DNA of 64,000 nucleotides from IMGVR_UViG_3300029267_004162:124001-188000, one strand, 5' to 3'. Shown: positions 12,802 through 35,873, counted from the first letter of the stretch. Notes: generated by a model from the letters alone, not told the origin. Translations and numbers: made by a program.

Positions 12802-12868
12802 TAAATCGTGTGGGACTCGAACCCACATTCTCGATCGAGCGAGGCTTATCCAATTAGCTGAACGATTT
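12802..12868 (-). pseudogene. tRNA-like element (67 nt) with shortened anticodon arm, possibly a degenerate tRNA-Arg
   Basis: Minus strand: AAATCGT-TCA-GCT AATTGGATA AGC-CTCG CTCGAT CGAG-AAT-GTGGG TTCGAGT CCCAC-ACGATTT-A. Acceptor stem (7 bp) and T-arm are perfect; the anticodon arm has a 4-bp stem and 6-nt loop. Confidence 0.7.
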
Positions 12869-28377: not shown

Positions 28378-29139
28378 TCACATCCCCTTGTTCCAAGCCA
28401 TGGCGAACACATCAGCGTAATCAGCATCACGGGGATCAGACATTTCAATGAACTGATACTCCAGGTACGTGGCAGCACGATCTTCCATGGTCAGCTCATA
28501 GTAGAGCAGTCCATTCTCTGACCAGCTCTCGATCTTGATATCCAATGCTTCGATCTTGGTGATGTTCATGTCTTCGTCCATGACGGCTCCAAAACCACCA
28601 TCCCAACACTGGGAGTATTGGAATTCCAGCGGAACATTGGATTCAATCACTACCACCGAACTCTCATGGTTATTGCCCGCGAAACCAAGGAACCAATCAT
28701 CGGGCTCACCATCATCATCACAGTCGTTCCAATAGTCGTTCAGGTCGAAGATCACGACCTCACGCTCCACATTTGAGTAATCCACCGGAGCGTTCTCAGC
28801 CTCAGCCTCAGCGTTGTTCTCAGCCTCAGCCTCAGCGTTGTTCTCAGCCTCAGCCTCAGCGTTCTCAGCCTCAGCGTTCTCAGCCTCGAAACCATCGGAC
28901 GACTCAATCGTGGGGACTACGCCCGACTCGCCAGCATCAGCAAAACGGACACCCGGTTCAGCAACAGTAGCAGGACCCTCGGTGATGTACGTGTTGGTCA
29001 CGTTGTTAATAACGTTGGTCGTCACGTTGGCGTCGGCGTGAACATCAACCAGGCCATCCAGACTGCCATCCTCGGGCAGACAACCTACGACACAGAGAGC
29101 AGAAACAGCAACAGCAACAGCACAGTAATTGCGAAACAT
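28378..29139 (-). CDS. acidic lipoprotein with AEN low-complexity linker
   Basis: VVGC(LPED) lipobox; very D/E-rich. Confidence 0.7.
   Translation of the reverse strand: MFRNYCAVAVAVSALCVVGCLPEDGSLDGLVDVHADANVTTNVINNVTNTYITEGPATVAEPGVRFADAGESGVVPTIESSDGFEAENAEAENAEAEAENNAEAEAENNAEAEAENAPVDYSNVEREVVIFDLNDYWNDCDDDGEPDDWFLGFAGNNHESSVVVIESNVPLEFQYSQCWDGGFGAVMDEDMNITKIEALDIKIESWSENGLLYYELTMEDRAATYLEYQFIEMSDPRDADYADVFAMAWNKGM
28790..28887. repeat. coding tandem repeat (CTCAGC/GTTCTCAGC units) encoding AEN/AEAEAENN repeats
   Basis: Directly visible periodic sequence. Confidence 0.9.
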
Positions 29140-29495: not shown

Positions 29496-29741
29496 GTTTT
29501 CATCCTCTCTCAGTTACCCCGGAAAACGCGCCCGGAGCTACAGCTCCCGGATGGATACCAAATCTCGACCGACCACGCGATAAAGCGTACAACTGCCACC
29601 TTCGGCTTGATGTTGCCAGTTCCGCACGCAACCCGCGACAACAACCACGTCACGGTGAGCGGCAACACACACTCCCTCGGAGTTCAGAGCAAAAAACATA
29701 GCGGTTCCTTATCGGCGACTGTCTCTCAAACCTGGACGCAG

Positions 29742-29894
29742 GGTGGGGTACTGAACCCTACCCACTAGTAGTATAGCAATCAGGAGAGGTTCTGTCAAGT
29801 CCTTTTTTGACCTCCTTGACCCCCCAGGAGAGGCCAGAAAGGGCCACGTTATAGGACGTTCCAGGACGTTCCAGAACGTCCTATAACGTGGCCC
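29742..29894 (-). repeat. copy 1 of ~150-bp hairpin-promoter cassette
   Basis: Near-identical to 32573-32725; contains a perfect 21-bp inverted repeat (29841-29861 / 29874-29894). Confidence 0.95.
29770..29798 (-). promoter_or_regulatory. consensus sigma70 promoter (early)
   Basis: TTGACA-17 nt-TATACT, with a TG dinucleotide before the -10 and an A-tract upstream of the -35. Confidence 0.88.
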
Positions 29895-29955
29895 AGAGAA
29901 GCCCAGAAAGGGGGTATCCAGAGAAGCCCAGAAAAGGGGTATCCAGAGAAACCCA
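29893..29955. repeat. 25-bp tandem direct repeat, ~2.5 copies
   Basis: CCAGAGAAGCCCAGAAAGGGGGTAT / CCAGAGAAGCCCAGAAAAGGGGTAT / CCAGAGAAACCCA. Confidence 0.9.
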
Positions 29956-30007
29956 TGGAAAATGGTGGGAATCGAACCCACACCCCCCCAGCCGAGGCCA
30001 GTGACAG

Positions 30008-30403
30008 TCAGATCCTGGCAATGTCACCTGGGTACTCACCGGTTTCTTCACCCCAAAGACGACGAGGCGCCAGTTGAGTCCCATTCCAGTTGTAGTCAGC
30101 CCCACATTCGCAGGTAGAGGTGAAGCCCGCACAACATACGGTTTCACCACAATCACACTTGACTTCTACCCACCCCGGAACCCTCTGGTCGAAGTCTCGA
30201 ACCTCGTGCTCAAGAATACCTCCACACTCACACTTCATACCGATTTGCTTGCGATTATCGGGAAATTCTAGTTCCACCTTGTCATCAACCGTGTGGATGA
30301 TGGTCACGCCACAGCCACAATCCTCGCACATGGCACTTTCACTATGATGTTGGCGATACTGGTCATCAACGATACGTATTTCAGACATCAACAACCTCCT
30401 CAA
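30008..30403 (-). CDS. Cys-rich Zn-ribbon protein
   Basis: CEDC, CECG, CDCG, CECG...YNWNGTQLAP. Confidence 0.65.
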   Translation of the reverse strand: MRRLLMSEIRIVDDQYRQHHSESAMCEDCGCGVTIIHTVDDKVELEFPDNRKQIGMKCECGGILEHEVRDFDQRVPGWVEVKCDCGETVCCAGFTSTCECGADYNWNGTQLAPRRLWGEETGEYPGDIARI

Positions 30404-30678
30404 ACTCTGTCTTGCTCTGCGAGATAGGCGGCGTAGCAGTCAGGACACGCATCACTAATCGTCTGATCCAGCGGAACCAACCGCCTACAACGAACACAGT
30501 TGATTCTGAGAGAAGAGCCAACTGCTTTTTCCCAACGAGGGATATGAAGGATTGTTTTCTCTCCTCCAAACGTGGTGACTGTAACATGAGCGGCAGGCCC
30601 TTCCCGTTCCACTTCGATGGACTGGATTCCTTGATCCTGCAAGAAGGCCAGGACGGCATCAAGTTGGGTGGCTGACAT
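30400..30678 (-). CDS. small Zn-ribbon protein
   Basis: CVRC...CPDC; AGGAG RBS. Confidence 0.6.
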   Translation of the reverse strand: MSATQLDAVLAFLQDQGIQSIEVEREGPAAHVTVTTFGGEKTILHIPRWEKAVGSSLRINCVRCRRLVPLDQTISDACPDCYAAYLAEQDRV

Positions 30679-30681
30679 GGA

Positions 30682-31245
30682 TCAGTTCTCCTGGTATTCC
30701 ACAAAGTCCCGGTACATGCCACCATCTCGGATAGACACGGTGTCTTCGGTCAGCAGAGCACCATTCATGTAGATGCTCACAGTAACCTCGGTGTACCCGA
30801 TTTCATCCTCGAAAGGATAACCAGCAGACAACTGAAACTGGTACAGCGATTCGTCTTCGCAGTATCCCTGCCGGAAACCAAACGCCACCTTCCCAGATTC
30901 ACCATCGCGGGGGTAGGGCGTTCCATCGGAGTCCATCACCCAAAGTTGCATGGGAACGATCTCGTCCCACTCAAACGCGAAGTAGAGGTCATATCCCTCA
31001 GATGGATGCCCCTCCTCATCGTCGGCCAGGGTGTCATCGACATCACCGGCAACCGCTCCCGTATCGGCGGTTACGTTACCGATTGACACGTTAGAGTTAT
31101 CTCCAACCTCGATATTGAAGACATTCGTCGCCACGTCGGTGTCCACGGTCGTATCAAGGCCCAGTTCAACTGGAACGTCTCCAGCGATCGGACAGCCACC
31201 AAGAACGACACACAGCATCAGATTTAGCAGAACGATTGCTCTCAT
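30682..31245 (-). CDS. acidic lipoprotein
   Basis: MRAIVLLNLMLCVVLGGC lipobox; D/E-rich. Confidence 0.7.
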   Translation of the reverse strand: MRAIVLLNLMLCVVLGGCPIAGDVPVELGLDTTVDTDVATNVFNIEVGDNSNVSIGNVTADTGAVAGDVDDTLADDEEGHPSEGYDLYFAFEWDEIVPMQLWVMDSDGTPYPRDGESGKVAFGFRQGYCEDESLYQFQLSAGYPFEDEIGYTEVTVSIYMNGALLTEDTVSIRDGGMYRDFVEYQEN

Positions 31246-31248
31246 CGG

Positions 31249-31464
31249 TTACTCTCCTCTCAATTCCCAGCCTTTTTGGAACCCCTCGCAGTACGCTTGG
31301 AACCAAATTTCCGCCTTCGAAGTTGCGTGATCGTAACTCATCTCATAATCCACAACCCAACCCCATTGTGGGTCTTTCCGGCATTGCGGATTAAGCGAGG
31401 CGGAGTTTGGGTGCATCGCGATATGCTTTGCGACCGCTTCACTTGCACATGACAGGGTTCTCAT
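31249..31464 (-). CDS. hypothetical protein
   Basis: Packed ORF. Confidence 0.5.
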   Translation of the reverse strand: MRTLSCASEAVAKHIAMHPNSASLNPQCRKDPQWGWVVDYEMSYDHATSKAEIWFQAYCEGFQKGWELRGE

Positions 31465-31628
31465 GCTTTATCCTCTCGCCCCGGTTCCGGTTTCACTTCG
31501 GGCTCTTCTTTGGGGGAGTTGCAATTCGGACAATGCGTAGTCTCAGGTGCTGCGAAGAACTGAAAGTAGCACCCACTGCATCGCACTAATGGCGAATTGC
31601 GACATGGTAAAAACTTAACGGTCTGCAT
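31461..31628 (-). CDS. 55-aa Zn-ribbon microprotein (not in ORF track)
   Basis: MQTVKFLPCRNSPLVRCSGCYFQFFAAPETTHCPNCNSPKEEP...; AAGGA RBS; ATGA overlap with the next gene. Confidence 0.6.
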   Translation of the reverse strand: MQTVKFLPCRNSPLVRCSGCYFQFFAAPETTHCPNCNSPKEEPEVKPEPGREDKA

Positions 31629-31670
31629 AGTGATCCTTTCTGGTCGTTAACATTCATCATCTGCTCCGAT

Positions 31671-32021
31671 TCATTCCCAAGGGAACTTCCCGCAGCGTTC
31701 CACACAATCTTGTAACTCCCGTCTAATCTGACGGACACGTTCTCGGGACAAGCCATGCTTCTTGGCGAGAGTGGCACCCTGGCCCTGCTCCATTCCCAGG
31801 ATATCGGCTACGATTCCAGGGTGGTTCCGTTCGATTTTGCCAAACGGGGTGGTTATACCACGTTGAGGTAGTAAATCCCGATAAAGAACTGCCAACTTCT
31901 TCACGACCTCAGCCATGCCTTGGGATACGTCCCATTGCTCGGCGATCTCCCTGCATGAGAGGGAAAGGATGCCCGGCTCGCGGGCCAGTTTATCTACGGT
32001 TGTAGTCATCTGTTTGCACAC
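31671..32021 (-). CDS. HTH protein with sigma70 region-4-like recognition helix
   Basis: LAKKHGLSRERVRQI; a second HTH-like segment LSCREIAEQWDVSQG; AGGAGGT RBS. Confidence 0.7.
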   Translation of the reverse strand: MCKQMTTTVDKLAREPGILSLSCREIAEQWDVSQGMAEVVKKLAVLYRDLLPQRGITTPFGKIERNHPGIVADILGMEQGQGATLAKKHGLSRERVRQIRRELQDCVERCGKFPWE

Positions 32022-32126
32022 CTCCTATACTCCTGACGGGTGAGCCTGAAAACGAACCTCGTTCGAGCGGGGTTTTGTTCGTTTGGCTCCAACGTTACGA
32101 AAATTAGGGGTTGGCGACCCGTCCAC

Positions 32127-32489
32127 TCAATCAGTTCTCAGTGGCGTCCATTCACCACTCAGAAGGAGCATTAGACACCCTTCATCACCTTCGAGGTTTA
32201 AGATACCATCGAGTTGGCGAACCCATCCATCTTCTAACCATTGTTCTTGGCTGGTGGGCGGCGTTTCAGAGTCGGGGTCATACTCACTACAAACTGGGTA
32301 GATTCTCGTAGGGTCAAACTCTACCGTTTCTGCCGTTGCCAACGCTTCTTGTGCTTTCTTCGCCGATAGTTTCTCTTGTGCTTGTGCACTAACACTTCGA
32401 AGATGTACTAGTAAATTGGCAGCGCTGGCTCCCAGCTGCCTTCGCAAGCGGGGCCGACCGGCAGGATCATTCTTATCGTTGTGCTTCAT
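32127..32489 (-). CDS. hypothetical protein, first gene after early promoter
   Basis: GAGGAG RBS; 120 aa. Confidence 0.6.
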   Translation of the reverse strand: MKHNDKNDPAGRPRLRRQLGASAANLLVHLRSVSAQAQEKLSAKKAQEALATAETVEFDPTRIYPVCSEYDPDSETPPTSQEQWLEDGWVRQLDGILNLEGDEGCLMLLLSGEWTPLRTD

Positions 32490-32572
32490 TGTGATTCTCC
32501 TCGGCGAGGTAGAGCGAATGGAAAACGCCCGGCCCCGACCGGACTGGGACTACCACGGACGGGACGACGCGA

Positions 32573-32725
32573 GGTGGGGTACTGAACCCTACCCACTAGT
32601 AGTATAGCAATCAGGAAGGCTCGTGTCAAGTCCTTTTTTGACCTCCTTGACCCCCAGGAGAAGGTCAGAAAGGGACACGTTATCGGACGTTCTAGAACTT
32701 CTAGGAACGTCCGATAACATGCCCC
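32573..32725 (-). repeat. copy 2 of ~150-bp hairpin-promoter cassette
   Basis: Near-identical to 29742-29894; the hairpin shows a compensatory base change. Confidence 0.95.
32601..32629 (-). promoter_or_regulatory. consensus sigma70 promoter (early, leftward)
   Basis: TTGACA-17 nt-TATACT on the - strand. Confidence 0.88.
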
Positions 32726-32777
32726 TTGGGGGGCTCCCCTTGGGGGTATATTCAAGACCAGCCTGGAAACCCGAGGG

Positions 32778-32807
32778 TTGACAGATACCCCCCTCTTGTG
32801 GTATAAT
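32778..32807 (+). promoter_or_regulatory. consensus sigma70 promoter (rightward, divergent)
   Basis: TTGACA-18 nt-TATAAT with extended -10 TG, upstream of the only + strand operon. Confidence 0.85.
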
Positions 32808-32901
32808 GGAAATAGGATCAACATAGGAAAACGGCCCGATACCCAGTGGGTGCTCACCCACCGACCGCAGTCCATGATGATCCGTGAGGAAGGAAGTACC
32901 C

Positions 32902-33741
32902 ATGCCTAAGAAGAAATCCGCCCCGAAATCCAAATCCGTAAAGAAGAAACCCACCCCTGGATCCATACTTGATCAACTAGAGGAGGCCGCACCCGCTCCC
33001 AAGAAGAAGATGCCCTCCAAACGGACTGCGCCAATCAAGACCCTCACCGAGGAACAGACCGTCGCAATAGCCAACCTCGCTCTGCTCACGAGTCGTGCCA
33101 AAGACTTAGACGCCCAGATTAAAGCTCTAAGGGCCGACCTGCATGAGGACATCCTAGAATGGTTCAACCAACGGTGTGAAGAAGACGGGGCGGCCCATTC
33201 CTCCGCTGATTTGGCCCCTCACCTAGAAACGAGTATGGCTTACGTTTTGAGCGTTCGTCCAGGATTCGACAGGAAAAGTCTGCGTGAATTCGTCAAGTCT
33301 ACCTTTGGGAAGGGGGCATCCAAGACCTGGAAAGCTTTAACCGAAGATGGGGGTCCGATTCAAATCACCGCTCTCCCACTAAAGCTAGACCAAGACCATG
33401 TTGCTCAAGTTATTTCCCAGCACCGGGGTGGAAGTGTGCTGAGTAAAAACAGTGGTCTGAGTGCTTCACAAATCAAACTCATGGGTGGCCGTCGAGTGAT
33501 TCTTGCCCTCAAACCACAGTTTGCGACCGGTGACAAAGTAGAACAGGTCGTAAAGGATCTGAAAGAGGCACTCGGGGATAAATTCGCCCAGTTTTTCGAA
33601 ATTGAGGTTGTTGTTGACGTTAGTGGAGATTTCCTCAAGAACAGAATCTCTTCCCAATCCGCATTAAGGGATGCCGCAAAACAGGCCATTGAAGTGGGCT
33701 GTGGTAAAGTTGTCCAGTACATCCGACCAGTGTCCAAATAA
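32902..33741 (+). CDS. hypothetical protein with Lys/Pro-rich N-terminus and coiled coil
   Basis: MPKKKSAPKSKSVKKKP...; AGGAAGG RBS. Confidence 0.7.
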   Translation: MPKKKSAPKSKSVKKKPTPGSILDQLEEAAPAPKKKMPSKRTAPIKTLTEEQTVAIANLALLTSRAKDLDAQIKALRADLHEDILEWFNQRCEEDGAAHSSADLAPHLETSMAYVLSVRPGFDRKSLREFVKSTFGKGASKTWKALTEDGGPIQITALPLKLDQDHVAQVISQHRGGSVLSKNSGLSASQIKLMGGRRVILALKPQFATGDKVEQVVKDLKEALGDKFAQFFEIEVVVDVSGDFLKNRISSQSALRDAAKQAIEVGCGKVVQYIRPVSK

Positions 33742-33753
33742 GGGAGTGATCAC

Positions 33754-34026
33754 ATGGCTGCTAAGATATCGGATATGATCAAAGAAATGGACTTTTTTGA
33801 CTTGCGATCCTTAATGAACGCCGTCAAGGAAGAGATCAGTTTGCGAAAGAGCGCTGACCGCTTCGTAATCGGTCAGAACGTAATAGTAAGACTGGGGGAT
33901 GAAATCGAATACCTCGCTGTAGTCGTCGATCACCAGTCAACCCAAAAGATCAAGCTGGAATTCCCAGACGGAACAACCAAAATCGTCTTGGCACACCGCG
34001 CTAGACCAAATGTGGGAAAATCATGA
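33754..34026 (+). CDS. small protein with SH3-like C-terminal half
   Basis: GGGAG RBS; FVIGQNVIVRLG...KIKLEFPDG. Confidence 0.6.
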   Translation: MAAKISDMIKEMDFFDLRSLMNAVKEEISLRKSADRFVIGQNVIVRLGDEIEYLAVVVDHQSTQKIKLEFPDGTTKIVLAHRARPNVGKS

Positions 34027-34601
34027 TCGCAATAACAGCCCTGCGACTCCCAGACAAACCTCAACGATGTACGACTGATGCTCTACATCGTTTGGATGAT
34101 GGGAGGCACGTAGCCCAGAAGAAATGGAATGGATGGCGGTGCGTTATCGTCTGGCAAAAACCCACATTACAAATCCTGTCCCGCTACAAGACCAGAACGA
34201 TCCCAATTTCTAAGTCGGCAAAGCAAGCAATCACCGCTATGTGTTTGCGTGCCAAGACCAAGGGACTTGTTCTGGATGCGGAGTACATGGGAATGAGGAG
34301 TGGAGCCCGTCGAGAAAGCGTGGTTCTGCTAGACGTGTTGTATCTCGAAGGGGTATGGCAAGGCAGCAAGCCATGGAATGAACGAGATGCCATGTTGCAA
34401 AGTCTACCGGTGTCTGCCCCCATACAACTGGTGGAGAATTTCTACACCGACTTCGCTGAAACGTATGCTCATCAACAACAAGATTCAGAAAGCGAGGGTC
34501 TCGTGATAAAGAGACTCAAGAGCAAACTGATCGGAGGAATCGATGGTTGCAAGAGGAATCCTCACTGGTTCAAGGTTAGGTACCGGGAGGATCAAGTATG
34601 A
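34023..34601 (+). CDS. ATP-dependent ligase-like nucleotidyltransferase, adenylation domain only
   Basis: Motif I QKKWNGWR, III LDAEY, IIIa LLDVL, IV EGLVIK, V WFKV; the ORF ends without an OB domain. Confidence 0.8.
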   Translation: MIAITALRLPDKPQRCTTDALHRLDDGRHVAQKKWNGWRCVIVWQKPTLQILSRYKTRTIPISKSAKQAITAMCLRAKTKGLVLDAEYMGMRSGARRESVVLLDVLYLEGVWQGSKPWNERDAMLQSLPVSAPIQLVENFYTDFAETYAHQQQDSESEGLVIKRLKSKLIGGIDGCKRNPHWFKVRYREDQV

Positions 34602-34881
34602 TGACATCAACCAGATGAGCTTCGCTCAATCTCAGGGACAGATCATAGTCCCCAACTCGAAGTTGTAAAGGGTCACCCAAGGGTGCGCGTCGCAGTACCC
34701 GAACCCCCGCCCCCTCAATGAGTCCCATCTCCATCATACGGAGTGACCAGGGACCAGGACGCACACCAACGATACGGCAACTCGCACCCTTGGGCACAGC
34801 ACTAAGTTCCTCCTCATTTCTCCCGGTCAAACTTATTCCAAACCTGAAAAATCTTGAGCAGGTTGTCTTCCATATGGTCAA
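34576..34881 (-). CDS. feoA: FeoA-family protein (start uncertain)
   Basis: RMMEMGLIEGAGVRVLRRAPLGDPLQLRVGDYDLSLRLSEA. Confidence 0.88.
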   Translation of the reverse strand: MTIWKTTCSRFFRFGISLTGRNEEELSAVPKGASCRIVGVRPGPWSLRMMEMGLIEGAGVRVLRRAPLGDPLQLRVGDYDLSLRLSEAHLVDVIILDPPGT

Positions 34882-35047: not shown

Positions 35048-35437
35048 CTATTCGCACAACAAATCTTTCTGAGAATGACAGGGAACCACCTGATGCCACT
35101 GAGCCATGTTTTCTTCTATCGTTTTGAGACGTTGGTCTTGTGTGGCGTCTATAGCGGGTACTGTCTGGTTCCACGCTTCTAACCAATCCTCTATCCGCGC
35201 AAGTCTTGCTTCCGTATCCTCGGAAGCAGTTTTCAATGAGGCTAACTCAGCAGCTATATGGCCTTGATGTTTTACACCTGCATCGACCACCTTCCTCATT
35301 TCTGACACTTCTTTTTGTTGATAATCAATTTGCATACGCATAGGCTGAACCATTGCGTATACACCAGCAATGATCGCCAATATCGCTACTACACCCCCGA
35401 ATGCTTTGGCGTTGCCACCACTACTGTCTTCTGGCAT
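35048..35437 (-). CDS. single-pass membrane coiled-coil protein
   Basis: N-terminal TM (FGGVVAILAIIAGVYAMV) followed by heptad-like helices; ends in TAG with an open frame beyond it. Confidence 0.65.
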   Translation of the reverse strand: MPEDSSGGNAKAFGGVVAILAIIAGVYAMVQPMRMQIDYQQKEVSEMRKVVDAGVKHQGHIAAELASLKTASEDTEARLARIEDWLEAWNQTVPAIDATQDQRLKTIEENMAQWHQVVPCHSQKDLLCE

Positions 35438-35873
35438 TTTTTATCCCTGCGTGTACTTGTTGGATTAGTTCACCTGGATCGCCGGCTTTCTCCACGTACG
35501 CGAATGCACCCAGGTTCAGAGCTTCCTTGGCAGAAGCAAGAGTCCCATGGGCTGTGTTGATTATGACGCGAACCTTGCCATTCATGTTCTTGATCTTCGC
35601 CAAGAGTTGGGTGCCATCTAAATCAGGTAAGCGTTGGTCCACTACCGCTACGTCAAAATCCTCATGCTGAACTTGTTCTAAAGCTTCAGTCGCATTCGGA
35701 CAGCCAACAACTTGAAAACCTTCACCCTCCATGAGACCAGTGAGTGTGAATAGTTGTGACTCCTCATCTTCAACGATGAGCAGACGAGCGCGTTTGTTTG
35801 GTGATACCGTAGAATCTGCGAAGAGGAGAATCCACGCTAGACCAGCGAGCCCTATTAGTATAGCTCCCATCAT
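35421..35873 (-). CDS. stand-alone response-regulator receiver domain with N-terminal TM anchor
   Basis: TM MMGAILIGLAGLAWILLF; LLIVEDE, VVDQRLP (phospho-Asp), NTAHG, YVEK; no output domain. Confidence 0.88.
   Translation of the reverse strand: MMGAILIGLAGLAWILLFADSTVSPNKRARLLIVEDEESQLFTLTGLMEGEGFQVVGCPNATEALEQVQHEDFDVAVVDQRLPDLDGTQLLAKIKNMNGKVRVIINTAHGTLASAKEALNLGAFAYVEKAGDPGELIQQVHAGIKNARRQ

What the first reader, a model, noticed from the sequence alone, without database searches (positions are those of the whole stretch)
29742..32725. Duplicated ~150-bp cassette: long covarying hairpin, consensus promoter and leader hairpin
Seen: two near-identical copies 2.83 kb apart. Each has, on the - strand, a ~21-bp-stem hairpin, an A-tract, TTGACA-17-TATACT, and a GTGGGTA...TACCCCAC stem at the transcript start. 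The long stem shows a compensatory change (GTTATAGGAC/GTCCTATAAC vs GTTATCGGAC/GTCCGATAAC). Its two other deviations in copy 2 are G-T wobbles only on the - strand, which points to selection on a single-stranded structure. Inference: a portable early-expression module (terminator or RNase III site plus promoter) that could also let the intervening gene block be deleted or shuffled by recombination.
Basis: partly seen in the sequence, partly recalled or inferred. Interest (0 to 1): 0.62.

Follow-up and report, generated by a model that had tools for sequence, protein, structure and literature searches.

The report
Duplicated hairpin–promoter cassette in jumbo phage
Two diverged copies of a 160-base control cassette (a very long hairpin, a near-perfect bacterial promoter and a hairpin at the RNA start) head two successive blocks of small orphan genes in an uncultured 263-kb marine phage, which resembles the promoter/stem-loop cassettes of T4-type phages but has a different build and only two copies.

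Summary
A 160-nt direct repeat lies at 29735-29894 and 32566-32725. It is 84% identical ungapped and 89% gapped, and the copies are 2831 nt apart. It is the largest dispersed repeat of a 262,650-bp phage genome and has exactly two copies.

On the - strand each copy has:
- a 21-bp stem (RNA fold -46 and -43 kcal/mol, z about -11), followed by a conserved TTTCTG;
- an A6 tract;
- TTGACA-17-TGcTATACT;
- a hairpin that starts at the predicted +1.

Conservation is patchy. Blocks of 29 and 43 nt are identical, while the hairpin tip and part of the promoter spacer are only about 40% identical. This points to old copies kept by selection.

Four of the five stem substitutions fall on two partner positions and keep pairing.

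Best reading (about 0.5): an insulating or processing hairpin, a strong host-sigma-70 early promoter and a 5' stabilising hairpin, heading two early ORFan operons. This is analogous to PeSLs.

What is not shown:
- Termination or RNase III cleavage was not tested.
- Recombination or excision was not tested; only unitigs could be laid.
- Covariation in homologues could not be tested, because no relatives exist in any collection searched.

A serious rival is a DNA-level operator array, because ACGT cores recur every 10 bp and the hairpin-promoter spacing is kept exactly.

Verdict: new variant of a known kind, moderate interest.

The parts
29841..29894 (-). Copy 1 long hairpin: 21-nt arms at 29874-29894 and 29841-29861, with an apical 12 nt at 29862-29873. 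ACGT cores recur every 10 nt.
29835..29840 (-). Copy 1 tail TTTCTG directly 3' of the stem, identical in copy 2.
   Evidence: not called as a terminator tail
29812..29926 (-). Copy 1 extended imperfect hairpin (about 100 nt, four helices). The 5' flank is not homologous to copy 2 but still pairs with the conserved 3' flank.
29799..29821 (-). Copy 1 upstream promoter block with the A6 tract (29803-29808); UP-element-like. Together with the -35 it is identical in copy 2.
29770..29798 (-). Copy 1 promoter: -35 TTGACA at 29793-29798, 17-nt spacer with TG at 29777-29778, -10 TATACT at 29770-29775. Predicted +1 about 29763.
29743..29765 (-). Copy 1 leader hairpin that starts at the predicted transcript start.
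32672..32725 (-). Copy 2 long hairpin: arms at 32705-32725 and 32672-32692 with two G-U pairs. The apical 12 nt are largely self-paired.
32666..32671 (-). Copy 2 tail TTTCTG.
32643..32757 (-). Copy 2 extended imperfect hairpin.
32630..32652 (-). Copy 2 upstream promoter block with the A6 tract.
32601..32629 (-). Copy 2 promoter TTGACA-17-TGcTATACT. Predicted +1 about 32594.
32574..32596 (-). Copy 2 leader hairpin, identical to copy 1.
30008..32489 (-). The block between the copies: seven or eight small ORFan genes. They include a 112-aa HTH protein (31671-32009), a lipoprotein-like 187-aa protein (30682-31245) and Cys-rich small proteins.
32778..32807 (+). Divergent consensus promoter (12 of 12 matches, TG) next to copy 2. 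It drives the three-gene + strand island at 32902-34601.

Best explanation
Each copy is a composite transcription cassette that heads an early operon of an uncultured marine jumbo phage.

(1) Promoter (sequence shown, function inferred). This is a very strong promoter for the host's primary sigma factor: A6 tract in the place of the proximal UP subsite, consensus -35, 17-bp spacer, TG-extended -10 (TATACT).

(2) Leader hairpin (inferred). The transcript begins at about 29763 or 32594, directly with a stem-loop. The most likely role is to stabilise the 5' end against 5'-end-dependent decay, as the ompA-type 5' hairpins do in E. coli (established knowledge).

(3) Long hairpin (inferred). It ends 42 nt upstream of the -35 and is followed by UUUCUG. 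It would act on - strand RNA arriving from upstream, as a terminator/attenuator and/or a host RNase III substrate (21-27 bp of duplex). At copy 1 that RNA comes from the copy-2 promoter through the 2.83-kb block. At copy 2 it would be read-through from the next leftward gene array, antisense across the three-gene + island.

Effect (inferred): each operon gets one dose of the same promoter instead of summed read-through, and the promoter is shielded from occlusion.

The two copies are old duplicates held by purifying selection on these parts. They are not a recently spread mobile repeat.
For: - Promoter quality and orientation. Only 8 intergenic, co-oriented hits with at most 1 mismatch occur in 263 kb, and all have TG.
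- The phage has two sigma-70-family genes, so host-type consensus promoters mark the early class.
- Both cassettes precede small ORFans. Copy 2 is at the head of the 129-gene leftward array.
- Patchy conservation: UP/-35 block 29/29; -10 plus leader 43/44; arms 18/21 and 19/21; tail 6/6; apical loop 5/12; variable part of the spacer 3/8. No similarity remains beyond the leader.
- Pairing is kept through two two-sided changes and one one-sided change. Four of five stem substitutions fall on two partner positions, p about 0.009 for placement alone.
- The apical 12 nt differ between the copies but extend the helix in both.
- The non-homologous 5' flanks still pair with the conserved 3' flank. The extra energy is -26 and -27 kcal/mol, against -17 to -19 (sd 2-3) for shuffled or random flanks.
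- The - strand RNA folds better than the + strand in both copies: -70.9 against -61.3, and -66.8 against -59.4.
- A U-rich tail exists on the - strand only.
- No strong - strand hairpin lies between the upstream array and copy 2.
- These are the two most stable intergenic hairpins of the genome.
- A tested analogue exists. In T4-type phages the PeSL promoter and stem-loop were shown to act as promoter and terminator (PMC2839356).
Against: - No transcript data exist: no RNA run holds the phage.
- The tail has only 4 T in 8, and the scan does not list it as terminator-like.
- The stem is two to three times longer than the genome's ordinary terminators and is not GC-rich inside.
- Copy 2 lies between divergent promoters, where no co-oriented gene ends.
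- The stem sequence is more conserved than pairing alone would require.
- ACGT cores phased every 10 bp and the exactly kept hairpin-promoter distance suggest reading as double-stranded DNA.
- Strand bias of the wobbles is not significant over the whole palindrome.
- The leader hairpin is not significant by energy alone.
- With two sequences the shuffle control of covariation is uninformative: 107 of 500 shuffles reach the observed value.
Confidence: 0.5

Rival explanations
1. The long palindrome works as double-stranded DNA. It is an array of five ACGT-centred sites on one face of the helix, bound by a phage or host regulator. A candidate is the sigma-region-4/Mor-like 112-aa HTH protein encoded in the block. 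The regulator would switch the cassette promoters on or off, and at copy 2 also the divergent + promoter. Hairpin formation would be incidental.
For: - ACGT recurs every 10 nt. The three-core pattern hits only the two cassettes, 5 matches against 0.04 expected.
- The stem sequence is highly conserved: 37 of 42 positions.
- The distance from hairpin to -35 is kept exactly through two compensating 1-nt indels.
- Copy 2 sits between divergent promoters. Their -35 starts lie 69.5 and 79.5 bp from the palindrome centre, one helical turn apart.
- An HTH gene lies in the operon driven by copy 2.
- The hairpin is unlike the genome's ordinary terminators.
Against: - Substitutions in non-core positions are matched on the partner arm.
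- Non-homologous flanks keep complementarity.
- Two of five cores are degenerate in copy 2.
- The 10-nt phasing partly follows from palindromy plus a local 10-nt tandem duplication.
- The half-site GGACGTTC is not clustered anywhere else in the genome.
- The HTH assignment is a weak lead: Pfam 21.6 bits, below the cut-off; Atlas scores under 0.9.
Confidence: 0.22
2. The cassettes are PeSL-like recombination modules whose relevant property is homology. Crossing-over between the two copies excises, circularises or swaps the 2.83-kb ORFan block.
For: - Direct orientation, with identical tracts of 32 and 44 nt in register.
- They flank ORFans.
- PeSLs in T4-type phages do this (PMC2839356, PMC4122927).
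Against: - There are only two copies.
- The copies have diverged strongly outside the functional blocks, so there has been no recent homogenisation.
- No joint, gap or depth change appears in four runs, and all assemblies are identical. However, the unitigs seem to break at the shared tract, which suggests an assembly word shorter than 44 nt. If so, a crossover there would make no new word and the test is blind.
- No relatives exist to show indels.
Confidence: 0.1
3. The palindrome is a selfish or structural DNA element that happens to lie next to duplicated promoters. Examples would be a MITE-like insertion, a single-strand initiation site or an origin hairpin.
For: - It is an imperfect palindrome of about 100 bp.
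- In copy 1 it is flanked by direct repeats of a roughly 20-nt motif.
- As DNA it folds at -25 to -28 kcal/mol.
Against: - It is never found without the promoter and has only two copies.
- Its spacing to the promoter is fixed.
- There is no GC-skew turn at the site beyond that caused by the + strand island.
- No flanking repeat exists in copy 2.
Confidence: 0.05
4. The two palindromes are lox/FRT-like sites, with inverted arms around an asymmetric spacer, for a site-specific recombinase that excises the block.
For: 21-nt inverted arms around a 12-nt asymmetric centre, with two sites in direct orientation.
Against: - The central 12 nt differ at 7 positions between the sites.
- No tyrosine or serine recombinase domain is found in the genome, and the controls for those families rang.
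Confidence: 0.02
5. The conserved core encodes a small peptide. An AGGAGG-like motif lies 11 nt before a TTG that coincides with the -35, opening frames of 30 and 47 codons.
For: An open frame exists in both copies, and my crude gene finder picked 32486-32629.
Against: - All three codons that differ in the shared part change the amino acid.
- The frames end differently.
- The JGI gene calls leave both regions intergenic.
- The promoter match is far better than chance.
Confidence: 0.03

Closest known systems
PeSLs (promoter-early stem-loops) of T4-type phages RB49/phi1, PST/T4 and nt-1/KVP40 (PMC2839356, PMC4122927)
   Same: - Repeated intergenic cassette that combines a sigma-70-type early promoter, A/T-rich DNA upstream of the -35 and a stable stem-loop.
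- Same orientation as the genes.
- Associated with database-orphan early genes.
- The proposed logic is the same: stop upstream transcription, then restart.
   Different: - Two copies here, not dozens.
- They bracket a block of seven or eight genes, not single ORFs.
- The main stem is 21-27 bp and ends 42 nt upstream of the -35. PeSL stems are short G/C or A/T runs that lie within or against the promoter.
- There is a second hairpin at +1.
- Leaders are 64-105 nt, rather than a Shine-Dalgarno directly at the 3' end.
- The phage is not T4-like by its terminase (about 28% identity to Dickeya/Erwinia jumbo phages).
- Recombination is not shown.
RNase III processing hairpins of phage early transcripts (T7 early R sites; lambda sib/tI). 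From established knowledge, not tested here.
   Same: - Long, nearly perfect duplex of about two helical turns between early transcription units.
- Flanked by further helices with symmetric internal loops.
- As in sib/tI, the same hairpin could either terminate or be cleaved.
   Different: - No cleavage data.
- No sequence or Rfam similarity.
- The phage has no RNase III gene of its own.
- Copy 2 is not obviously inside a transcript.
5'-terminal stabilising stem-loops of bacterial mRNAs (ompA type). From established knowledge.
   Same: The hairpin begins at or within a base or two of the predicted +1 and is perfectly conserved between the copies.
   Different: The start site is predicted, not mapped. 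The energy is modest (-13 kcal/mol, z -1.4 to -1.8).
Operator palindromes between divergent phage promoters, and phased repeat operators such as MetJ met-boxes. From established knowledge.
   Same: Copy 2 lies between back-to-back promoters. It carries phased ACGT-centred repeats.
   Different: - The period is 10 bp, not 8.
- Copy 1 has no divergent partner.
- Partner-arm co-variation is not expected for an operator.

Membership tests
PeSL cassette (T4-type phages) | Sigma-70-like early promoter consensus | tested here: met
   TTGACA-17-TATACT with TG, 11 of 12 matches, in both copies
PeSL cassette (T4-type phages) | [quoted passage not shown] | tested here: inconclusive
   An A6 tract lies at 29803-29808 and 32634-32639, but the surrounding 23 nt are not A/T-rich
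PeSL cassette (T4-type phages) | Stable stem-loop placed within or against the promoter: between or over the boxes, in the A/T-rich region, or just downstream of the -10 | tested here: inconclusive
   The leader hairpin fits the 'just after the -10' class. The main hairpin ends 42 nt upstream of the -35, outside the described positions
PeSL cassette (T4-type phages) | Many copies, dense in hyperplastic regions, between single ORFans | tested here: not met
   Exactly two copies by BLAST, pattern search and covariance model. They bracket seven or eight genes
PeSL cassette (T4-type phages) | Host genome is a T4-type myovirus | tested here: not met
   The terminase is nearest to Dickeya/Erwinia/Pseudomonas jumbo phages at about 28% identity. 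The Gp23 family search was blank, but its control was blank too, so it says nothing
PeSL cassette (T4-type phages) | Mediates indels, swaps or mini-circles by recombination | not testable with these tools
   No relatives exist. Only unitigs could be laid, and they seem blind to a crossover inside the 44-nt identical tract
Intrinsic (Rho-independent) terminator | Stable stem-loop directly followed by a U-rich tract | tested here: inconclusive
   The stem is very stable. The tail TTTCTG is conserved but has only 4 T in 8, and the consensus scan does not list it
Intrinsic (Rho-independent) terminator | Lies at the 3' end of a co-oriented transcription unit | tested here: inconclusive
   Copy 1 lies 113 nt after the stop of gene 30008-30388. 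Copy 2 follows no co-oriented gene; only read-through across the + island could reach it
RNase III processing site | About 20 bp or more of RNA duplex | tested here: met
   21 pairs, extended to 24-27 by the fold
RNase III processing site | Cleaved by RNase III in a transcript | not testable with these tools
   No RNA run holds the phage. There is no phage RNase III gene
Sigma-70 promoter with UP element and extended -10 | Consensus hexamers at 17 bp, TG at -15/-14, A tract at about -47 to -42 | tested here: met
   Activity was not tested
lox/FRT-like recombination site | Identical crossover spacers and a cognate recombinase | tested here: not met
   The spacers agree at only 5 of 12 positions. 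No integrase or resolvase domain is found in the genome, and the controls rang

The most novel reading that the evidence does not exclude
The roughly 100-bp palindrome is not a terminator. It is a double-stranded control element: five ACGT-centred sites phased on one helical face, held at a fixed distance from the promoter and bound by a phage early protein. A candidate is the sigma-region-4/Mor-like HTH protein made from the copy-2 operon. The element would form an autoregulatory switch that governs the two cassette promoters together, and at copy 2 also the back-to-back + promoter. That would be a new kind of early on/off switch for a jumbo phage that later moves to its own sigma factors.
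Probability: 0.2. Interest if true: 0.6.

Novelty: new variant of a known kind. Interest (0 to 1): 0.42.

Why it matters
Composite terminator/promoter cassettes have so far been described in T4-type phages. There they organise early ORFan expression and drive modular gene shuffling.

A cassette with the same logic but a different build, in an unrelated uncultured marine jumbo phage, would suggest that 'stop-and-restart' early cassettes are a convergent solution in large phages.

The two diverged copies also act as a natural mutational scan. They mark which nucleotides matter: the UP/-35 block, the -10 with the first 30 transcribed nt, the stem pairing and the tail.

Practically, the element offers:
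- a compact, probably very strong, insulated promoter part;
- a defined test case for whether very long hairpins upstream of phage promoters act as RNA (terminator or RNase III site) or as DNA (operator).

Tried and rejected
- **More copies in the genome.** BLAST, motif searches and a covariance model (R1) over 258.65 kb found only the two copies. One weak hit (L008 900-932, E 0.29) lies inside or antisense to coding sequence and was dismissed. Genome bases 120,001-124,000 were not in the covariance-model search, but they were covered by the BLAST and pattern searches.
- **Relatives for covariation.** All of these returned only this same phage:
  - megablast against phages;
  - two exact-pattern scans of IMG/VR;
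  - protein-anchored scans with three neighbouring proteins;
  - a word search of 5.8 billion proteins with the 285-aa neighbour;
  - a JGI metagenome scan with the 23-nt leader.
The other contigs are 100% identical.
- **Reads for excision.** Four runs from three studies hold the phage, but only as unitigs. They show no joints, no loose ends at the cassettes and flat depth. This does not test recombination inside the 44-nt identical tract.
- **Rfam.** Nothing apart from chance microRNA-like hits at E about 0.6.
- **Tandem segmental duplication.** The gene blocks after copy 1 and copy 2 share no protein similarity. The two lipoprotein-like proteins align only at E 3.1.
- **tRNA remnant upstream of copy 1.** It is only a T-arm-like hairpin. 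ARAGORN and Rfam do not call a tRNA.
- **Homology beyond the 160 nt.** The alignment shows none upstream of the hairpin or downstream of the leader.
- **Strand bias of wobbles as proof of an RNA structure.** Not significant over the full palindrome.
- **Family searches with blank controls.** Gp23 and T7-like RNA polymerase were blank, but so were their controls, so they are uninformative.


Full report
**Source.** The window is bases 124,001-188,000 of a 262,650-bp virus record rated 100% complete. The first and last 144 nt of the record are identical, and a tandem array lies at both ends. Its large terminase is only about 28% identical to those of Dickeya, Erwinia and Pseudomonas jumbo phages. 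The same genome occurs, without a single difference over the stretches compared, in a 262,608-bp JGI contig, a second IMG/VR contig, and unitigs of four sediment or seawater runs from three studies. It is an uncultured marine jumbo phage without close relatives.

**The observation.**
- The repeat finder reports one 160-nt direct repeat, 29735-29894 and 32566-32725, 84% identical without gaps, 2831 nt apart. BLAST gives 89% with gaps.
- In a self-comparison of the whole genome, tandem arrays aside, this is the highest-scoring dispersed repeat.
- Motif searches and a covariance model of the hairpin find no third copy.
- On the - strand each copy reads, 5' to 3': a long hairpin, the tail TTTCTG, a 13-nt linker, a 29-nt block with an A6 tract ending in TTGACA, a 17-nt spacer with TG, TATACT, six bases, and then a hairpin GTGGGTA...TACCCCAC.
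- The long hairpins fold at -45.9 and -42.9 kcal/mol as RNA (z about -11 to -12) and at -27.7 and -24.6 kcal/mol as DNA.
- The promoter scan lists both promoters at 11 of 12 matches with TG.
- The leader hairpin is real but unremarkable by energy: -13.1 kcal/mol, z -1.4 and -1.8.

**How the copies differ**. Identity in register is:
- 29/29 for the A-tract/-35 block;
- 43/44 for the stretch from the 3' half of the spacer through the -10 and the leader hairpin;
- 6/6 for the tail;
- 18/21 and 19/21 for the arms;
- 5/12 for the hairpin tip, 3/8 for the 5' half of the promoter spacer, and 7/13 for the linker.

Identity falls to background right after the leader and right before the 5' arm. Such sharp alternation of perfect and near-random stretches is not what a recent duplication or a conversion tract leaves. 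It is the footprint of purifying selection on old copies, and it marks the functional parts.

**The stem.**
- Of 21 pairs, 18 never vary, one changes on one side (C-G to U-G), and two change on both sides (A-U to C-G, C-G to G-U). All remain paired.
- Four of the five substitutions fall on two partner positions. For random placement that has probability 0.009, before asking that the new bases pair.
- With only two sequences the tool's own shuffle control is uninformative (107 of 500).
- The tips differ in sequence but extend the helix in both copies, to 24 and about 27 pairs.
- Outside the stem, the 5' flanks are not homologous, yet each pairs with the conserved 3' flank. This gives a four-helix hairpin of about 100 nt at -70.9 and -66.8 kcal/mol.
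- The flanks add -26 and -27 kcal/mol. Shuffled or random flanks give -17 to -19 (sd 2-3), and at most 2 of 500 shuffles do as well.
- So a folded single strand, or a process that copies one arm from the other, has shaped this sequence.

Within the 21-bp stem both mismatches of copy 2 are G-U on the - strand, and the - strand folds better than the + strand in both copies. A gapless symmetry count over 45 nt each side of the centre gives 9 G-T against 5 A-C, which is not significant. The better argument for the - strand is that a U-rich tail follows the stem on that strand only and is conserved.

**Context.**
- Only eight intergenic, correctly oriented sites in the genome match the sigma-70 consensus with at most one mismatch. 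All eight have the TG extension, and the two cassettes are among them.
- The phage has two sigma-70-family genes of its own. The consensus promoters are therefore best read as the early, host-dependent class.
- Genes run leftward in one block of 129 from 156,629 to 61,174 in genome coordinates. Copy 2 sits at the head of that block. Copy 1 lies 2.83 kb further in.
- Between the copies lie seven or eight small genes without Pfam or PHROG families:
  - one is a 112-aa HTH protein with a sub-threshold sigma-region-4 match and Mor/HTH look-alikes;
  - one looks like a lipoprotein;
  - several are Cys-rich.
- The genes after copy 1 are also orphans and are not paralogues of the first block.
- Copy 2 lies back to back with a perfect + strand promoter at 32778-32807. 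That promoter drives a three-gene island, including an ATP-dependent-ligase-like protein.
- That island ends overlapping the last gene of the next leftward array, with no strong - strand hairpin in between. Read-through from that array could therefore reach the copy-2 hairpin.

**Mechanism proposed.**
- The promoter part is close to certain as sequence and highly likely as function.
- The predicted start, seven bases after the -10, is the first G of the leader hairpin. A 5'-terminal stem-loop is a known protection against 5'-end-dependent decay in bacteria (established knowledge). The perfect conservation of the first 30 transcribed bases shows they matter, but not for what.
- For the long hairpin I favour an RNA-level role on the - strand: attenuation or termination, and/or cleavage by host RNase III. 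The effect would be that the two operons are each driven once by the same promoter. This is the logic shown experimentally for PeSLs (PMC2839356).

**Evidence against a plain terminator.**
- The tail has 4 T in 8 and is not called by the scan.
- The genome's other terminator-like hairpins have 8-13-bp GC-rich stems with clearer T tails. The two cassette hairpins are outliers, at -44.7 and -42.3 kcal/mol against -32.8 for the next most stable.
- The phage has no RNase III gene, so any cleavage would depend on the host.

**The main rival.**
- The stem carries ACGT every 10 nt: five perfect cores in copy 1, and three perfect plus two one-off in copy 2. The three-core pattern matches nothing else in the window, 5 matches against 0.04 expected.
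- The hairpin-to-promoter distance is identical in both copies, although the linker carries two compensating 1-nt indels.
- At copy 2 the two -35 elements lie 69.5 and 79.5 bp from the palindrome centre.
- The stem sequence is more conserved than pairing alone needs.
- These features fit a phased protein-binding array on duplex DNA. I give this reading 0.22. It cannot easily explain the partner-arm co-variation or the pairing of the flanks.
- Part of the phasing follows from palindromy plus what looks like a 10-nt tandem duplication at the tip.

**Recombination.**
- The copies are direct repeats with identical tracts of 32 and 44 nt, so homologous exchange is possible in principle.
- Nothing shows that it happens. 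There are no joints and depth is even in four runs, all assemblies are identical, and there are no relatives to reveal indels.
- The unitigs appear to break at the shared tract. They would then be blind to a crossover inside it, so this is no evidence against exchange either.
- A lox-like reading fails. The central 12 nt differ at 7 positions, and the genome has no integrase or resolvase domain, with the controls positive.

**Comparison with the known.**
- The nearest described system is the PeSL of T4-type phages (PMC2839356, PMC4122927).
- Shared features: sigma-70-type early promoter, A/T-rich upstream tract, stem-loop, link with ORFans, and stop-and-restart logic.
- Not shared: copy number and density, stem size and position, the +1 hairpin, the long leaders, and the phage lineage.
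- It works like a PeSL but is not a member of that family as defined. I file it as a new variant of a known kind.

**Limits.**
- No transcript ends and no RNA run were available.
- There are no homologues.
- The host is unknown.
- Gene calls outside the JGI set come from a crude script.

Noticed in passing
window 32778-32815; twin at genome 223363-223400 (L012:15363-15400): The + strand consensus promoter (TTGACA-18-TATAAT with TG) that diverges from copy 2 has a twin identical at 37 of 38 nt, 66 kb away, in front of another + strand gene. This is a second pair of duplicated promoters in the genome.
   Followed up: partly
window 29965-29981 (-), window 12810-12826 (-), L006:488-504 (+), L012:13673-13689 (+): Four intergenic hairpins look like tRNA T-arms (GTGGGTTCGA..CCCAC), but no callable tRNA surrounds them. 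GTGGG...CCCAC hairpins occur at 13-14 loci against about 2 expected and are mostly intergenic. The cassette leader and the + promoter leader (32846-32861) belong to this set.
   Followed up: partly
window 29893-29942: Two tandem 25-nt units lie directly 5' of the copy-1 hairpin. They repeat the CCCTTTCTGG motif that also forms the hairpin's 3' tail. Copy 2 has no such units.
   Followed up: partly
window 32527-32544 (-): A terminator-like hairpin with a GTTTTCC tail lies inside the 105-nt leader of copy 2, before the first gene (start at 32489). It could be an attenuator.
   Followed up: no
window 28792-28878: Three to four tandem 24-nt repeats lie inside the 253-aa lipoprotein-like gene (28378-29139) and encode an acidic Ala/Glu/Asn repeat. 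Unitigs of all four runs break there.
   Followed up: no
window 32902-34601 (+): A three-gene + strand island sits within a leftward genome. It holds a 279-aa singleton with a basic N-terminus (weak structural look-alikes: DUF3164, Mu Gam), a 90-aa protein and a 192-aa ATP-dependent-ligase-like protein. Together they might be an early DNA-end protection or repair unit.
   Followed up: partly
window 65242-65436 (-) (L020:1501-1695) and L021:1501-1686 (+): The phage encodes two sigma-70-family proteins, found by region 2 matches above the Pfam cut-off. The HTH of the 112-aa block protein weakly resembles region 4 of the first one.
   Followed up: partly
L008:3025-3103 and L008:4144-4222: A 79-nt direct repeat, 97% identical, flanks a single 333-aa leftward gene. 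It is a second case of dispersed repeats bracketing a gene.
   Followed up: no
L005:1-513 and L014:14424-14650: Tandem repeat arrays lie at both ends of the record, and the last 144 nt equal the first 144 nt. The record is probably circularly permuted or terminally redundant, although it is listed as linear.
   Followed up: no
window 35421-35873 (-) and 34576-34797 (-): A stand-alone response-regulator receiver domain protein (150 aa) and a FeoA-like 73-aa protein lie among the early genes to the right of the cassette.
   Followed up: no
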